Assembly: GCF_040938485.1 (NCBI RefSeq)
Contig: NW_027271913.1
Location: 1,302,001 to 1,366,000 of the forward strand
DNA: 64,000 nt
DNA from: Diadema antillarum
Taxonomy: Eukaryota
Reading direction: 5' to 3'
Part shown: in pieces, positions 56,192 through 61,720 of the stretch
Layout of the letters: each line of letters starts with the position of its first letter
How positions within the stretch are numbered: the first letter of the stretch is position 1
The notes under the pieces: generated by a model
The model's database searches: none
The model's input: only the letters and a program-made list of their open reading frames with translations
What the model was told of the DNA's origin: nothing
Translations under genes and position numbers: made by a program

Positions 56192-56936
56192 GACGAGTCT
56201 TGATCTGTGTCACGAGCAGAACAGAACTTCTGCTGTCAGAACTGTGGGATTGAAATAAGAAGTTTTCATTGTCATCATCACTACAGCTAGCATATTGTGT
56301 CATATCTGGCCCAAAATGCTGTAATCATCTTTGTATGTGCTGTGATCTCCAGGGCTGTATATCATCTATTTTTTTTAATTTAATAATTTACATGTTTACT
56401 TTAAATGATTTGAAAAAGAATCGTAATTGTATCATAATTTAGTTTTGAATAAACTGCTTAGTATTAGAGCTCATTGTATTGCCATCAGAACATATCTTAT
56501 CAAATATTTAGACATAGTACACTTACAAATCAATTACCTGGTACAAGATTATAGTCTATTACTTTACAGGATCCTAGGAGGAGTTCAACTTACCATCCTC
56601 TTGTGATTTATTCAAAGATAAATAGATGTCATATTGTGATATAGCAAAGCTGACATCAGTCAGGTCACTTCAATAACCATGATAACAAGCAAAATAGAAA
56701 ATTAAATGAAAAACATTGAAATTTAATTTGTATTTTATGAGTAATGGGAGGATAGAGAATTCAGCCATTGGCTGCGCATTAGCCATTGGCTGAATTTGCG
56801 TAATATGAGAGGCCGTTCCGCGCGCAATCGCCATCTTTGAAAGCTGATGACTACTGTGAAAAAATATTTCGAGATAAAATAGATCTTGTATAAGCCACAT
56901 TTAAGGCTGTTCAGAGTAAGGGAGGGAGCGGAGGGT

Positions 56937-57085
56937 GCTGAATTCTCTATCCTCCCATTACTCATAAAATACAAATTAAATTTCAATGTTTTTCATTTAA
57001 TTTTCTATTTTATCTCGTAATGTACGGTAGAGAATTCAGCCATTGGCTGCGCATTAGCCATTGGCTGAATTTGCGTAATATGAGA
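56937..57085. repeat. DIRS internal complementary region (ICR)
   Basis: 56937-57011 is the exact reverse complement of 56691-56765. 57006-57085 is the exact reverse complement of 61570-61649. The two parts overlap at the CTA-TTTT-ATCTCG junction. Confidence 0.95.
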
Positions 57086-57150
57086 CTTCAAAGATTTTCA
57101 CAGTAGTCATTTTCACCGAATATATTGTCAGAGAAAGTTTTTGGGCAACT

Positions 57151-58167
57151 TTACCTATGTTTACAGGACTGAATCTTGTCCCTTCCTAGAGGTTGTCCCA
57201 GAACTGCTTGTCCAAAAGATGTTGCCTGGGATGCCGGTTTCAGGTAAAAATTCCTGAACGTGGATTCATTTTTCCACCCAGCATGCTTGAGAATGTCTGC
57301 TATTGGAAAATGATTCCTCTTGGCAGATGAGGTTGCCGCCGATCTCGTTGAATGTGCTTTGAAGAGATCGGTGTCGATACCTGATGCTCTCAACACAGTT
57401 TTTATCCATCGAGCGATGGTTTGCTTTGATGCCTTCCCATGGGGTTGCTTGTAGGTGACAAATAGTGCATTCACCTCCTTCCTCAATGTGCTTGTTCTGT
57501 TAATGTATTCTTTAACATAGTGTACAACACAGAGTTTCTTATCCTCGGGAAAGGCTTTCAGTGTTACTTTCACTCCCACATTCCCAGGTTGACTCTGCTT
57601 TATCAAATCAGCCACTGCTATTTCCACACAATCTTTGGACGCCTTCACATTGTTAAGGGTTAGGTATGAAAGTGTTTGCACTCTTTGGGCAGAAGTCAAC
57701 GCTAGTAAAAAACATACTTTGTGTGTCAGTTGACACAGCGAAATCTTATGAGCTGGAGTTACTTGTCTGAGGTAGCTCAGCACCTTGCCCACATCCCATA
57801 TGAAGCTGTATCTCGGAGTGGGTGGTCGGAGATTAAAAATGCCCCTGAAGTACCGGCAAATCCAAGGATGTGTAGAAATGGTGTATTTCTCGTCCCGTAG
57901 AAGAACAACTGATGCTAGTGCGCTCCTTGATGTATTCAAGGTGCTGTAGCTTGCTCCATTTTTGTACATAGAATTAAAAAACGCAAACAAATTTCCCACC
58001 TTCGTATGGGTCCAACATAAGTGACGCTCATGACAAAACCTTTGCCACTTCCTAATATACACCATATACTGCTCCTTGGTGGATTTCCTCCAAGACGCTG
58101 CCATTATATCAGCAGTCTCCTCCGTCAGTCCTTGAGCTATGAAATGTTTGCTCCAACCCTGCAACAT
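57151..58167 (-). CDS. DIRS ORF3: tyrosine recombinase with N-terminal SAM-like integrase domain
   Basis: Catalytic motifs AQR (R), KAHSTR (HxxR), AGW and RNFY (Y). N-terminal SWRKST..QY..Y..KW..FC is also present. Confidence 0.95.
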   Translation of the reverse strand: MLQGWSKHFIAQGLTEETADIMAASWRKSTKEQYMVYIRKWQRFCHERHLCWTHTKVGNLFAFFNSMYKNGASYSTLNTSRSALASVVLLRDEKYTISTHPWICRYFRGIFNLRPPTPRYSFIWDVGKVLSYLRQVTPAHKISLCQLTHKVCFLLALTSAQRVQTLSYLTLNNVKASKDCVEIAVADLIKQSQPGNVGVKVTLKAFPEDKKLCVVHYVKEYINRTSTLRKEVNALFVTYKQPHGKASKQTIARWIKTVLRASGIDTDLFKAHSTRSAATSSAKRNHFPIADILKHAGWKNESTFRNFYLKPASQATSFGQAVLGQPLGRDKIQSCKHR

Positions 58168-60197
58168 AAGAGGGAGAGATGTGTAAGTGGATGGGGTCTA
58201 CCTGTAATGGGTTGGGTTAACAACTGGTGTTTTCGCAATACCCAGGGCTCCTCCAATAGCATGTTACGTAGTACGGTATACCAGGGCTGTGTTGGCCAAT
58301 TTGGCACTATCAAAATTCCCCTAGCGCCATCTTGTCTGATTTTTTGGAGACACTTTGCAACCAAGCTAAATGGGGGAAACGCATAAAATACTAGGGGTCC
58401 CCAGTCAATAGTGAATGCGTCTACTGCCCATGCCCCTGGATCTGGTCTCCAGGAGACGTATGTTGGGAGCTGGGCATTCAGTCTGGTGGCAAAAAGGTCT
58501 ACATTTGGTAACCCATACCTCTGCACTATCTCATTGAATATTGTCTTGTCTAGCATCCATTCTATATTGTCATTGAATTTCCTTGACATCGTATCAGCTT
58601 CTGTGTTCTTAGAGCCTGCTAAGTGAGATGCTGTTATCCAAATTTGTCGTCTACTGCACCAATCCCAAATTTGCAACGCCATTTCGTTACATGCTTCAGA
58701 CTTGACGCCGCCCATGTTATTCAAGTATGTCACCGCTGTGGTGTTGTCTAATCTCAACAGTATATGTGCATCTCTGACATTTGAACAGAAGCTTTTGAGT
58801 CCCAAACCGGCTGCTAGCATTTCCAGATAGTTTATTTCATTACCTGCTGCTCTTGCTAATTCTTGAGCATTCCATCTACCCCCTGTCTTGGATTGCAGGT
58901 CTGTGGCACCCCAACCTTGTCCACTAGCATCTGTTCTTATTTCTTTTGATACTTTCCCTGGGTACAGGGGTTTAGACACGAGATGTGCATGGGATGACCA
59001 CCAAACTAGTTCCGCCTTGGCTCTATTTGATAGGCTCATATGTCTATCGAAATGTCCTTTCTGTTTTCTCAGGGCTCTGATTTTTTCCCTTTCCAGCTGC
59101 CTGTAATGCAAGGGGCCGTACTGAGATGCTGGTAAGGCAGCCACAATCTTCCCAATGACTTTAGCTACCTCCCGGATACTAGGTTTGTTATTAGCAAGTA
59201 AGGATCGACATGCATCTTGAATGTCATTGCTTTTACTGGCTGGGAGGGTGATTCTCATTTCAGATGTATTTAAATGGAAACCCAGAAATTCAATCTCACG
59301 GGATGGTTCAAGTACCGATTTCTCTGAGTGAATAATGAACCCTAGACTAGTCAAAAGGTCAGTGGTGGCTTGCACTGCTGAGCGAGTGTCTGCTTTATTG
59401 TTCCCAATTATCAGTGTGTCGTCCAAGTACGACAAAACTGTGTGCCCCTGTTGTCTTAGTAAGGCAAGTACTGGTTTCAGTATTTTGGTGAACAGTCTTG
59501 GGGCGGAAGATAAGCCATTTGGCAAAGCTTTGAACTGCCACAATTGGTTTCTCCATACGAAGCGGAGATATTTACGAGAGTCTAAGTGAATGGGAATTGT
59601 GTAGTATGCATCACGGAGGTCTACTGAAGCCATATAACACCCTTTTGAGAGGAGTAGAATACCAGATTGAATATTATCCATTTTAAAGTGTTGGTACTGA
59701 ACACTTTTGTTGAGTTCGGACAGGTCAAGAATTAATCGAACTCCTCCGTTCTTTTTTGGTCTCGTGAAAACCTCTGAAATAAATTCCCCTTCTTCATGGG
59801 CACATTTTTCAATGACCTGTTTTTCTTCCAGAACAAGAATCTCATGGTCAATCTTGGCTGTTTCTTCAGCATTCCGCTTGTAAGAACGCAGAGGTTTTTC
59901 TCGAGAAGGGGGAAATTTTTCTGGGTCAAATTCTATTGTATAGCCTTGAACTGCTTGAATAATGTGTGAGTCTCTCGTGATATTTTCCCAAGCAGGGAAA
60001 AATGGCTTCAGACGACCTCCGACGACAGCTGGTGTTGTAACTAGATCGTTGTCTATGTTGTGTTCATAGTCACCTACCTGTTCTATTTCCTCCCCTGGCT
60101 TTGGCTCTGCCTGTGGTAGGTTGGCTGCTTGTTGCCACCCTCCCTTGCTGCTGTCGGTGTGTAAGTGTGAGGAGGATCTCGAGGTCTCCCCCTCCAA
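58137..60197 (-). CDS. DIRS pol ORF2: reverse transcriptase, RNase H and Dam-like methyltransferase domain
   Basis: RT motifs RLILDL, DLRDAY, LPNGLSSAPRLF and SYLDD. RNase H residues TDAS, NYLEMLA, RLDNTTAV and ADTMSR. MT-like DLFAT and YAFPPF. The track start is TTG, and the first ATG lies inside the RT domain. Confidence 0.95.
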   Translation of the reverse strand: MEGETSRSSSHLHTDSSKGGWQQAANLPQAEPKPGEEIEQVGDYEHNIDNDLVTTPAVVGGRLKPFFPAWENITRDSHIIQAVQGYTIEFDPEKFPPSREKPLRSYKRNAEETAKIDHEILVLEEKQVIEKCAHEEGEFISEVFTRPKKNGGVRLILDLSELNKSVQYQHFKMDNIQSGILLLSKGCYMASVDLRDAYYTIPIHLDSRKYLRFVWRNQLWQFKALPNGLSSAPRLFTKILKPVLALLRQQGHTVLSYLDDTLIIGNNKADTRSAVQATTDLLTSLGFIIHSEKSVLEPSREIEFLGFHLNTSEMRITLPASKSNDIQDACRSLLANNKPSIREVAKVIGKIVAALPASQYGPLHYRQLEREKIRALRKQKGHFDRHMSLSNRAKAELVWWSSHAHLVSKPLYPGKVSKEIRTDASGQGWGATDLQSKTGGRWNAQELARAAGNEINYLEMLAAGLGLKSFCSNVRDAHILLRLDNTTAVTYLNNMGGVKSEACNEMALQIWDWCSRRQIWITASHLAGSKNTEADTMSRKFNDNIEWMLDKTIFNEIVQRYGLPNVDLFATRLNAQLPTYVSWRPDPGAWAVDAFTIDWGPLVFYAFPPFSLVAKCLQKIRQDGARGILIVPNWPTQPWYTVLRNMLLEEPWVLRKHQLLTQPITGRPHPLTHLSLLCCRVGANIS

Positions 60198-61414
60198 GCC
60201 TTCCCTAAAAAAGGCTGTGCAGATGAACCGGCCATGGGGTTGGAATGTGATGTTCGGCGGTCATAACCCCTCCCCAACGGGCGGGTGAACCCAGTCGACG
60301 TGTATTGACGGCGAGATGTCACATCCGGTTTCTTGTACGGCTGGAACCGTGATTGCTCTCGTGTGAAGCGTGATTTCATCATGCCTGACATTGTTTTCCT
60401 TTGTTCTTGGATCTCTTTCACTTGGCGCCCCAGGTCATCTCCAAACAAGTACTTAGTCACTTTGTGAGAGGGCTTGCACAGGTGGTGGAAATTTGAGTTC
60501 ATGTCAGGCTTTATGCTGTCCTTTCTCATGCAGTTGAGGGAGAAGTTTGCATCGCAGAGAAAAGCCATAGCATCCTGCTGAGCTTCAGACAAAGTTGCTG
60601 GAAGGGTACGAGCAAACGCGTTTATCCCTTTCAAGAGGGATGATTGGATCATTTGTAGTTTCAGATCCCTGTGTCTCGTCCCCGTCGAGATGTTCTCCCA
60701 GATAGTGCTGTTCACTTTAGGGGTTTCTAGACATGTGCAGTTAGATGGGCAGGGGTAGCGAGTTGCTGCTTCGTCGAGAGATTTCTGGTCAAGTTTTTGT
60801 CCCATCATATACACAATGGTGTCCGCGACATCCTCATCTAGTGGTTCCCCTATCCCGGACGGAGCCACGAATTTCTGAGCCATTCGTGGTATCTTGAATT
60901 CTGGCCGTTTGTCTTTATCTGCCTCCTGTAGGCCTACGTCCGAAAACAAGCTGACCGCGTCATCGCGGTTTGCCGATAGGAAATCAGCCACGCTGCGATT
61001 ATCCGCCAATTCTATGACGGGTGGTGAGCTGCTACCCCTTTGTGTGTCGCAGTCGCCATATTCACTAAAACAATCCCGCGGCGTGTTGGCATGTTGTTCT
61101 CCATGATGAGGAGTGCTCAAAGTCTCGATCATTTTTTCGAACATTGACTCGAGTTTCCCAATGCGGGACATAACCTCCGTGCTATTTTCCGCTGTAGTCA
61201 CAGTCGGGTTGGGAGCGGTAGCAGCTGGTGCGGGCGGGTTCGGCTGTGCCTTCCCCGAAGCCGCGGGGCGGGATGCCTTAGGCCTCCCGCCGCTAGACAG
61301 AGTTTTGCCTGCAGCCTTCTTCTTTGCTGCCGGAGCTGGGCTGGCCTTAGGCTCACACAGCTCGGTATCTTTTTTGGCTTTTGCCTTCTCCGATTTGTCA
61401 GCTGGTTCATCCAT
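60083..61414 (-). CDS. DIRS gag-like ORF1 (443 aa from first ATG)
   Basis: Long open frame. The C-terminal half (LETPKVNSTIW, D.KLQ.IQ, AFLCDANFSLN..RK..IKP, YLFGDDL) is typical of DIRS ORF1. The track start at 61432 is GTG; the first ATG is at 61414. Confidence 0.85.
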   Translation of the reverse strand: MDEPADKSEKAKAKKDTELCEPKASPAPAAKKKAAGKTLSSGGRPKASRPAASGKAQPNPPAPAATAPNPTVTTAENSTEVMSRIGKLESMFEKMIETLSTPHHGEQHANTPRDCFSEYGDCDTQRGSSSPPVIELADNRSVADFLSANRDDAVSLFSDVGLQEADKDKRPEFKIPRMAQKFVAPSGIGEPLDEDVADTIVYMMGQKLDQKSLDEAATRYPCPSNCTCLETPKVNSTIWENISTGTRHRDLKLQMIQSSLLKGINAFARTLPATLSEAQQDAMAFLCDANFSLNCMRKDSIKPDMNSNFHHLCKPSHKVTKYLFGDDLGRQVKEIQEQRKTMSGMMKSRFTREQSRFQPYKKPDVTSRRQYTSTGFTRPLGRGYDRRTSHSNPMAGSSAQPFLGKAWRGRPRDPPHTYTPTAAREGGNKQPTYHRQSQSQGRK

Positions 61415-61720
61415 GCTGAGAACGATAATCACGCTTGTAAGAGAGCACGAATTCAGTTCCGTATTTCCGCAGATTTCGATGATATTTTCCGATTTTTCGG
61501 TCAGATAAAAATCGCTTCGCGATCGAACATTGCGCTGGAACGAAGATGGCGATTGCGCGCGGAACGGCCTCTCATATTACGCAAATTCAGCCAATGGCTA
61601 ATGCGCAGCCAATGGCTGAATTCTCTACCGTACATTACGAGATAAAATACATGTGTAACTATACACGTCATCTGATCTCTGGTCAGGCTAGATAACAAGC
61701 AGTCGCAAAATACACAGCAG

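What the first reader, a model, noticed from the sequence alone, without database searches (positions are those of the whole stretch)
58159..60077. DIRS element hides a phase-0 intron that would swap RT/RNaseH/MT for the recombinase (Gag-YR vs Gag-Pol switch)
Seen: a strong donor CAG|GTAGGT at 60078/60077 lies only 5 nt after the gag stop (TAG 60083-60085) and exactly between pol-frame codons (E-I-E-Q|V-G-D). A textbook acceptor (branch-like CTTAC, then CATCTCTCCCTCTTATGTTGCAG|GGT) at 58159/58158 lies exactly between YR codons 3 and 4 (M-L-Q|G-W-S-K). Removing this 1919-nt intron joins ..EIEQ to GWSKHF.. in frame. Inference: with the -1 frameshift (next finding), unspliced RNA gives Gag (443 aa) and Gag-RT-RH-MT (~1092 aa), and spliced RNA gives Gag and Gag-YR (~781 aa). 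Both enzymes would share a 43-aa transframe linker and could be packaged via Gag. A junction 5 nt after the gag stop would also avoid EJC-type NMD. I recall splicing being mentioned for some DIRS elements, but I cannot confirm that this combined frameshift-plus-splice logic is described.
Basis: partly seen in the sequence, partly recalled or inferred. Interest (0 to 1): 0.86.

Follow-up and report, generated by a model that had tools for sequence, protein, structure and literature searches.

The report
Spliced intron inside a DIRS retrotransposon
A sea-urchin DIRS retrotransposon has a real intron, conserved across related families, that cuts out its reverse-transcriptase gene and joins the region after gag in frame to its recombinase, which would explain how these elements express the recombinase.

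Summary
The element is an intact DIRS1-like retrotransposon of Diadema antillarum on the minus strand.

- **Splice sites.** They are the best donor and best acceptor in the whole element.
- **RNA evidence.** In one polyA RNA-seq run, 4 split reads with 3 start points skip exactly 58159-60077. This was the only joint found.
- **Conservation.** Eight further DIRS families (YR 40-69% identical) keep the same layout. The donor lies 11-41 nt after the gag stop on a pol-frame codon boundary. The acceptor lies exactly 22 codons before the conserved Trp of YR, on a YR-frame codon boundary.
- **Start codon.** Seven of the nine families have no ATG upstream of the acceptor. Four have no AUG in the YR frame at all before that conserved Trp.
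- **Frameshift site.** A gag-frame slippery heptamer (U UUU UUA or A AAA AAC) is kept in all nine.

The best reading is a spliced subgenomic RNA that gives Gag and, by -1 frameshift, Gag-linker-YR (781 aa). Translation, packaging and the NMD idea remain inferred. No searched paper describes this. Two unchecked notes from this scan propose the same for other DIRS copies in this genome.

The parts
61543..61651 (-). 5' inverted terminal repeat of the DIRS element
   Evidence: Inverted-repeat pairs I1 and I2 match 56729-56837 and 57006-57085.
60083..61414 (-). gag ORF: 443 aa, ATG at 61414, stop TAG at 60085-60083
   Evidence: Translation. No Pfam hit. Homologous gag ORFs lie upstream of pol in the related loci.
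60206..60212 (-). Slippery heptamer T TTT TTA in the gag frame, followed by GGG; putative -1 frameshift site
   Evidence: Position and frame. The same heptamer in the gag frame occurs in L002, L010, L011, L015, L016, L018 and L019; A AAA AAC occurs in L017 and in oyster L014. The fold of the downstream 128 nt is not significant, z = -1.35.
60078..60205 (-). Transframe linker at the end of exon 1: 43 pol-frame codons from the slip site to the donor, shared by Gag-Pol and the predicted Gag-YR
   Evidence: The pol frame is open from the stop at 60263.
60072..60080 (-). Splice donor CAG|GTAGGT, cut between 60078 and 60077, phase 0 in the pol frame, 5 nt after the gag stop
   Evidence: rank 1 of 181 GT. 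Used in 4 split reads.
58159..60077 (-). Intron of 1919 nt holding almost all of RT/RNase H/MT, plus the ATG at 58167-58165
   Evidence: Joint 'skips 1919, CT..AC (cut +1)' in run X12. RVT_1 Pfam hit in the pol ORF.
58137..60197 (-). pol ORF (RT, RNase H, MT-like domain); its last 22 nt lie in exon 2
   Evidence: Translation. Pfam RVT_1, E = 6e-23.
58159..58187 (-). Acceptor region: CTTAC (58187-58183), pyrimidine tract, TTGCAG| ending at 58159
   Evidence: rank 1 of 318 AG. Used in 4 split reads. In the pol frame it encodes ..LSLLCCR.., so it is dual-coded.
57151..58158 (-). Exon 2: tyrosine recombinase from G4 (GWSKHF..) to the stop; the first in-frame AUG after the junction is Met22 (58104-58102)
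   Evidence: Translation. Pfam Phage_integrase and Phage_int_SAM_1.
56691..57085 (-). Internal complementary region and 3' terminal repeat
   Evidence: Repeat families D1 and I1-I4.

Best explanation
Window 58159-60077 (minus strand) is a genuine, alternatively spliced GT-AG intron inside an intact DIRS1-like retrotransposon of Diadema antillarum.

Unspliced RNA is the genomic RNA and the mRNA for Gag. By a -1 frameshift at U UUU UUA (60212-60206) it also gives Gag-RT/RH/MT (1092 aa).

Splicing removes RT/RH/MT. It joins the 43-codon pol-frame linker that follows the slip site, in frame, to codon 4 of the tyrosine recombinase. The spliced RNA still makes Gag as its main product. Ribosomes that slip at the same site read on into YR and give Gag-linker-YR (781 aa).

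Shown here: the junction exists in polyA RNA, and the sites and their phases are conserved. Inferred: frameshifting, synthesis of the fusion protein, and its use.

My odds for each step: the intron is real, 0.9. It is maintained by selection, 0.85. It is the route to YR expression, 0.7. YR is made as a frameshift fusion to Gag, about 0.55-0.6.
For: (1) Run X12 holds four split reads with 3 start points that skip exactly 58159-60077, with GT..AG on the element strand. It was the only joint in the element. X12 depth is about 12-16 over gag, 13-33 over YR, and 3-7 over the 3' two-thirds of the intron.

(2) These are the best donor and best acceptor of the whole element.

(3) Nine families share the layout. 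They are the window, L002, L010, L011, L015 (D. setosum), L016 (Holothuria) and L017-L019 (metagenomes), with YR 40-69% identical.
- The top-ranked donor lies 5-41 nt after the gag stop, at phase 0 of pol.
- The acceptor ranks 1-2 and lies exactly 22 codons before the conserved Trp, at phase 0 of YR.
- The introns are 1898-1958 nt.

(4) The residues after the donor vary (VGD, VGE, VST, VNM, VSE, VSL, VSA, VGK). The sequence NAG|GTRNNT is nevertheless kept, so the constraint is on the RNA signal and not the protein.

(5) Only the window and L002 have an ATG before the acceptor. L015, L016, L018 and L019 have no AUG in the YR frame between the upstream stop and the conserved Trp. The stretch after the junction is a conserved part of YR (..GLS/T....I..SWR).

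(6) A slippery heptamer in the gag frame is kept 37-47 codons before the donor in the seven families measured.

(7) No conserved slippery site lies in the pol/YR overlap, so a Gag-Pol-YR read by a second frameshift is unlikely.

(8) The annotators' models P0035 and P0079 use the same acceptor.

(9) A 2885-nt contig of the probable DNA run X4 crosses both sites unspliced, and no contig carries the joint.
Against: - RNA support is only 4 reads in one of three runs. The other two runs had 49 and 114 reads on the element.
- Reads were accepted at 90% identity or more and carry fixed differences from this copy, so they come from sibling copies.
- The library looks unstranded.
- The junction has 4 nt of microhomology (CAGG). 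That is expected at consensus splice sites but is also compatible with reverse-transcriptase template switching.
- Depth in the first third of the intron is as high as over gag, so depth alone does not fit a single simple intron.
- The acceptor also encodes Cys-Arg of a conserved pol C-terminal motif, which could account for part of its conservation.
- The phases are inherited within one clade, so the nine families are not nine independent tests.
- No significant RNA structure follows the slip site.
- No protein data are available.
Confidence: 0.65

Rival explanations
1. The splice is real, but its role is to make a gag-only mRNA that raises the Gag:Pol ratio, as the spliced RNAs of copia and BARE do. 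On this reading YR is translated separately, from its own AUG on unspliced RNA.
For: The gag stop precedes the donor, so Gag is the main product of the spliced RNA in any case. The window and L002 do have ATG-TTG-CAG in front of the junction. RefSeq models call the YR ORF as a stand-alone 336-aa protein.
Against: The ATG is missing in 7 of 9 families, while TTGCAG| is kept. The acceptor sits exactly at the start of the conserved YR region and in frame with the donor in all nine families. A gag-only RNA would need neither feature. An AUG about 3.2 kb into an unspliced RNA has no evident route to translation.
Confidence: 0.15
2. YR is made from the spliced RNA, but by termination-reinitiation rather than as a fusion. 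After the gag stop, ribosomes restart at the next in-frame AUG. In the window that is Met22 at 58104, 59 nt after the stop on the spliced RNA.
For: The gag stop is always close to the junction, at 5-41 nt. The window, L002 and L011 have Met22, L010 has a Met at +6 and L017 has one at +9.
Against: L015, L016, L018 and L019 have no AUG between the junction and the conserved Trp. The residues upstream of Met22 are a conserved part of YR across DIRS families. The kept phase-0/phase-0 match would then have no purpose.
Confidence: 0.1
3. The split reads are noise. They could come from rare cryptic splicing, from a template-switch artefact at the CAGG microhomology, or from transcripts of a genomic copy that carries this deletion. 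None of these would have a role in the element's life cycle.
For: There are only 4 reads in one run, and 4 nt fit both sides of the joint. The acceptor tract is partly forced by pol coding.
Against: It is the only joint in 5 kb, and it uses the top donor and top acceptor with canonical GT..AG. The same pair is kept in eight other families although the neighbouring residues are not conserved. No DNA contig carries the joint. A deleted DNA copy with these exact ends would itself be a product of splicing.
Confidence: 0.06

Closest known systems
Retroviral subgenomic spliced mRNAs, for example the avian leukosis/Rous sarcoma virus env mRNA, which joins the first gag codons in frame to env (from my own knowledge)
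   Same: One primary transcript serves as both genome and mRNA. A 5' donor near gag is joined to an acceptor in front of a downstream gene, removing pol. The downstream protein is read in frame across the junction.
   Different: Here the donor lies after the whole gag ORF and its stop, not near its start. The downstream gene is therefore reached only through the gag/pol frameshift, and it is the integration enzyme, not an envelope protein. DIRS elements have no protease, no DDE integrase and no LTRs.
Spliced gag-only RNAs of LTR retrotransposons, such as the Drosophila copia 2-kb RNA and barley BARE (from my own knowledge)
   Same: Splicing of a retrotransposon transcript removes or disables pol, and the spliced RNA yields Gag in excess.
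   Different: In those elements splicing only tunes the Gag:Pol ratio. Here the acceptor also brings a second enzyme, YR, into the frame used for Gag-Pol.
HIV-1-type Gag-Pol -1 programmed ribosomal frameshift at U UUU UUA (from my own knowledge)
   Same: The same heptamer lies in the gag frame, followed by GGG, inside a gag/pol overlap.
   Different: No significant downstream structure was found. The frameshift has not been tested. One slip site would serve two different downstream reading frames, depending on splicing.
Dictyostelium DIRS-1 and the DIRS1-like elements surveyed by Piednoel et al. 2011 (PMC3266345) and Malicki et al. 2020 (PMC7192593)
   Same: [quoted passage not shown]
   Different: Neither paper mentions a natural intron or splicing. 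The survey has no occurrence of 'intron' or 'splic', and the 2020 paper deals only with an artificial reporter intron. The overlap is described there but not explained.

Membership tests
DIRS1-like retrotransposon (DIRS order) | Encodes a tyrosine recombinase in place of a DDE integrase | tested here: met
   Pfam Phage_integrase (E = 1.6e-11) and Phage_int_SAM_1 on the 338-aa ORF. 308 homologues at E <= 1e-10.
DIRS1-like retrotransposon (DIRS order) | Reverse transcriptase/RNase H ORF lying between gag and YR | tested here: met
   Pfam RVT_1, E = 6e-23, in the 686-aa ORF. RNase H was not scored separately.
DIRS1-like retrotransposon (DIRS order) | Methyltransferase-like domain at the C-terminal end of pol | tested here: inconclusive
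   No Pfam model matched. The region aligns with pol of the other DIRS loci at 38-68% identity, including the FPPF and HPL motifs.
DIRS1-like retrotransposon (DIRS order) | Inverted terminal repeats plus an internal complementary region | tested here: met
   Arms 61543-61651 against 56729-56837 and 57006-57085; internal repeats at 56691-57085.
Spliceosomal GT-AG intron | Canonical GT..AG ends with a consensus donor, a pyrimidine tract and a branch-like site | tested here: met
   CAG|GTAGGT, CTTAC, and 17 pyrimidines in the 21 nt before AG. Ranks 1/181 and 1/318 (the PWM is approximate and taken from memory).
Spliceosomal GT-AG intron | The joined exons are found in RNA | tested here: met
   4 split reads with 3 start points in polyA run X12. 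None in X10 or X11, which had low depth.
Spliceosomal GT-AG intron | The sites are conserved in relatives | tested here: met
   Eight further families keep the position and phase of both sites.
Retroviral-type -1 programmed frameshift | X XXY YYZ heptamer in the upstream frame, inside the overlap | tested here: met
   T TTT TTA at 60212-60206 in the gag frame. Conserved, or replaced by A AAA AAC, in relatives.
Retroviral-type -1 programmed frameshift | Stimulatory stem-loop or pseudoknot 5-9 nt downstream of the heptamer | tested here: inconclusive
   MFE -35.6 kcal/mol and z = -1.35 against shuffles. Pseudoknots were not modelled.
Retroviral-type -1 programmed frameshift | Measured frameshifting, or a detected fusion protein | not testable with these tools
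   Needs a reporter assay, ribosome profiling or proteomics.

The most novel reading that the evidence does not exclude
The intron running from just after gag to the start of YR is not special to this sea-urchin family. It would be an ancestral feature of animal DIRS1-like elements in general, so every such element would use a retrovirus-like subgenomic RNA. One frameshift site would then deliver either Gag-RT/RH/MT or Gag-YR, depending on splicing.

This would explain how YR is expressed. It would also explain why half of the known DIRS1-like elements carry a long YR/pol ORF overlap: that overlap would be exon 2, starting at an upstream acceptor.

Support so far is limited. In five 'long-overlap' families (oyster L014, L023, L048, L050, L067) a top-ranked donor (rank 1 in four, rank 4 in oyster L014) lies at phase 0 (8-32 nt after the gag stop where the gag ORF could be placed). 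An in-frame acceptor ranked 1-4 lies 86-94 codons before the conserved Trp, with the YR frame open from there. That acceptor also encodes the conserved FPPFS motif of pol, and no RNA was examined for these families.
Probability: 0.4. Interest if true: 0.88.

Novelty: new variant of a known kind. Interest (0 to 1): 0.8.

Why it matters
How DIRS elements express their recombinase has had no clear answer. The YR ORF lies about 3 kb into the RNA, overlaps pol in another frame, and in many families has no start codon. A conserved splice that puts YR behind the gag/pol frameshift site gives a concrete answer that can be tested.

It would add a third order of retroelements, after retroviruses and LTR elements, that uses subgenomic splicing. 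The novelty is that one frameshift signal would feed two alternative enzymes.

It would also mean that both enzymes are made as Gag fusions in an element with no protease.

There are practical consequences. Genome annotation currently calls gag and YR as separate 'uncharacterized proteins' and omits the intron. TE curators could use the donor/acceptor pair as a diagnostic feature.

Tried and rejected
- **Own-ATG model for YR.** Rejected as the general route, because the ATG is absent in 7 of 9 families.
- **Second -1 frameshift from pol into YR.** No slippery heptamer lies in the pol frame of the overlap in 7 of 8 families checked (L016 was not scored). The single one found, in L017, lies far downstream.
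- **Read-through of the gag stop on the spliced RNA.** The gag frame runs into another stop (TAG at 58139-58137) a few codons after the junction (read).
- **Spliced contigs among YR homologues.** Members of the 90% clusters are all 302-338 aa with no linker extension. The 357-410-aa hits carry N-terminal extensions with no resemblance to the gag end or the transframe linker; they look like upstream YR-frame sequence of long-overlap families (frame not checked).
- **ENA contigs L097 and L098 of this family.** Both are unspliced DNA.
- **P0031.** This 573-aa protein joins mid-gag to mid-YR of a Strongylocentrotus-like element at a different junction. It was not followed up.
- **Look-ups that returned no DNA.** P0010, P0016 and P0028.
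- **RNA structure after the slip site.** Not significant.
- **Literature.** Eight full-text searches and six papers read gave no report of natural DIRS splicing. The Goodwin and Poulter papers and reviews are not in the library, so an earlier mention there cannot be excluded.
- **DNA copies without the intron.** This could not be tested directly.
Full report
**What is in the window.** On the minus strand, 61651-56691 is a complete DIRS1-like retrotransposon.
- gag runs from ATG 61414 to TAG 60085-60083 and encodes 443 aa.
- A 686-aa ORF at 60197-58137 carries a Pfam RVT_1 domain.
- A 338-aa ORF at 58167-57151 carries the Phage_integrase and SAM-like domains.

The host is Diadema antillarum. 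The window's own YR belongs to a 90% cluster of RefSeq 'uncharacterized proteins' from that species, and the family also occurs in D. setosum. A second copy, L001, is 98.8% identical and has identical splice sites.

**Checking the observation.**
- The donor CAG|GTAGGT is cut between 60078 and 60077. It lies 5 nt after the gag stop, on a pol-frame codon boundary.
- The acceptor TTGCAG|GGT is cut between 58159 and 58158, between YR codons 3 and 4. CTTAC and a pyrimidine tract precede it.
- Removing the 1919 nt joins ..EEIEQ to GWSKHF.. in frame.
- The sizes given are exact: 443, 1092 and 781 aa, with 43 linker codons.

The sites stand out from the background. The donor is the only 8/9 consensus match among 210 GT dinucleotides in the element, and the acceptor ties for the richest pyrimidine tract among 351 AG. 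With an approximate position-weight matrix that I wrote from textbook frequencies, they rank 1 of 181 and 1 of 318.

**RNA evidence.** I laid three polyA RNA-seq runs of the same species label, plus one run kept as contigs, on 56650-61700.
- Run X12 had the most reads on the element (386). It holds four split reads, from three start points, with 68 nt on the shorter side of the best read.
- These reads skip exactly 1919 nt and end CT..AC on the + strand after a 1-nt shift. That is GT..AG at 60077 and 58159 on the element strand.
- It was the only joint listed anywhere in the 5 kb.
- Runs X10 and X11 had 49 and 114 reads on the element and showed none. At that depth this says little.
- X12 depth is about 12-16 over gag and 13-33 over YR, but 3-7 over the 3' two-thirds of the intron. 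The first third of the intron is as deep as gag, so depth alone is not clean evidence.
- Judged from neighbouring depth, roughly a fifth to two-fifths of the reads crossing the sites are spliced. These are very small numbers.
- Run X4 looks like whole-genome DNA: 13.9 million contigs and flat depth. One 2885-nt contig crosses both sites unspliced and no contig carries the joint. An abundant DNA copy without the intron is therefore unlikely, although contigs cannot prove absence.
- The reads carry fixed differences from this copy, so they come from sibling copies of the family.

**Conservation.** I collected related elements through YR homologues, the contigs that encode them, and one metagenome scan. 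Nine families with YR 40-69% identical share the architecture. They are the window, L002, L010, L011, L015 (D. setosum), L016 (Holothuria leucospilota), L017, L018 and L019.
- The best donor of the whole element ranks 1 of about 190 GT in eight families and 3 in L015.
- It lies 5-41 nt after the gag stop, at a pol-frame codon boundary.
- The best or second-best acceptor lies exactly 22 codons before the conserved Trp of YR (W26), at a YR-frame codon boundary.
- The introns are 1898-1958 nt.
- In L018 and L019 the top-scoring GT is the second of a tandem pair (AG|GTAG|GTRAGT). The first GT is the homologous phase-0 site and matches the window's donor.

The amino acids after the donor differ between families (VGD, VGE, VST, VNM, VSE, VSL, VSA, VGK, VGE). 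The nucleotides NAG|GTRNNT are kept all the same, so the constraint is on the splice signal. The acceptor is less clean as evidence, because TGC-AGG also encodes Cys-Arg in a conserved pol C-terminal motif.

**Why this looks like the route to the recombinase.**
- Only the window and L002 have an ATG in front of the acceptor. The other seven families read YLQ|, CLQ|, VLQ|, LLQ|, GLQ|, CLQ| and ILQ|.
- L015, L016, L018 and L019 have no AUG in the YR frame from the upstream stop through to the conserved Trp.
- The 22 residues after the junction belong to a motif conserved across DIRS recombinases (..GLS/T....I..SWR..T..QY). Translation must therefore enter from upstream of the junction.
- On the spliced RNA the only open path into that frame is the pol-frame linker. 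That linker is reached from gag by a -1 shift.
- A slippery heptamer in the gag frame is kept in all nine families: U UUU UUA in eight and A AAA AAC in L017. It lies 37-47 codons before the donor in the seven families where the distance was measured.
- The pol/YR overlap holds no conserved slippery site, which argues against a Gag-Pol-YR read by a second frameshift.
- Read-through of the gag stop on the spliced RNA runs into another stop a few codons on (read).
- Two annotators' models, P0035 in D. setosum and P0079 in Holothuria, independently use this same acceptor, though with other donors.

**Mechanism.** Shown: the element's RNA is spliced at 60078|58158 in vivo, and selection keeps both sites and their phases.

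Inferred: unspliced RNA gives Gag, and by frameshift Gag-RT/RH/MT. Spliced RNA gives Gag, and by the same frameshift Gag-linker-YR. Both enzymes would then be Gag fusions in an element that has no protease.

Whether echinoderms use junction-dependent NMD is unknown to me, and the short distance may simply reflect a short linker. No significant RNA structure follows the slip site.

**Wider pattern (suggestive only).** Among 20 families where a gag ORF could be placed, 11 have the element's top-ranked donor 5-42 nt after the gag stop, and 4 more have a donor there ranked 3-4. L027, L079, L082 and L095 have none.

In five 'long-overlap' families (oyster L014, L023, L048, L050, L067) the donor is at phase 0. 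The acceptor ranks 1 in four of them and 4 in L048. It lies 86-94 codons before the Trp, in frame, with the YR frame open from there.

That acceptor (TTTCCTCCTTTCAG) also encodes the FPPFS motif of pol. The window has a similar unused site at 58366. Coding constraint could therefore explain the acceptor signal, and no RNA was examined for these families.

**Comparison with what is known.** The logic resembles three known systems: retroviral subgenomic mRNAs, the gag-only spliced RNAs of copia and BARE, and HIV-type Gag-Pol frameshifting. These comparisons rest on my own knowledge.

Several features differ. The donor sits after a complete gag ORF. The gene brought in is the integration enzyme. 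One frameshift site would serve two alternative downstream frames.

The DIRS1-like survey (PMC3266345) contains no mention of introns or splicing and only describes the ORF overlap. The Dictyostelium DIRS-1 study (PMC7192593) deals only with an artificial reporter intron. Eight full-text searches found no report of natural DIRS splicing. The Goodwin and Poulter papers are not in the library, so an earlier remark there cannot be ruled out.

Two unchecked first-reader notes from this scan propose the same kind of intron, 1981 and 1973 nt long, in other DIRS copies of this genome.

**Verdict.** The protein-level steps are still untested. I file it as a new variant of a known kind, namely subgenomic splicing of a retroelement.

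Noticed in passing
window 58343-58366 (minus strand): A second strong acceptor-like site, GCGTTTCCCCCATTTAG|C, encodes the FPPFS motif of pol. No split read uses it. In 'long-overlap' DIRS families the homologous site is the best acceptor and is in frame with the donor after gag.
   Followed up: partly
L010:185-3388: In this Logan contig gag and pol form a single 1067-aa ORF. The true gag C-terminus, including the slippery TTTTTTA, lies in another frame. A 1-nt difference upstream has therefore fused gag to pol. A sister contig is 1 nt shorter (P0138).
   Followed up: no
P0031 (573 aa, metaclust): This protein joins the middle of a DIRS gag (..KDLKIQYIQKSLTKGL) to the middle of a YR (HNASYSAINTARS..) of a Strongylocentrotus-like element. 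The junction differs from the intron described here. It may be a gene-model artefact or an internally deleted element.
   Followed up: no
window 57155 and 57191: RNA reads and the DNA contig differ from this copy near the YR stop. There is a 4-nt insertion after 57191, and reads diverge at 57155. This matches the different C-terminus of the RefSeq 336-aa YR, so the window copy carries a minority 3' end.
   Followed up: no
window 59601-59639: Contigs of run X4 break away from the element at 59601 and 59639, and RNA depth drops about threefold near 59520. Some genomic copies seem to be truncated or interrupted here, which blurs the depth profile across the intron.
   Followed up: no
L014:3926-3932 (oyster) and L017:1860-1866: These elements carry A AAA AAC in the gag frame where the echinoderm families have U UUU UUA. 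Two classical slippery heptamers are thus exchanged at the same place.
   Followed up: partly
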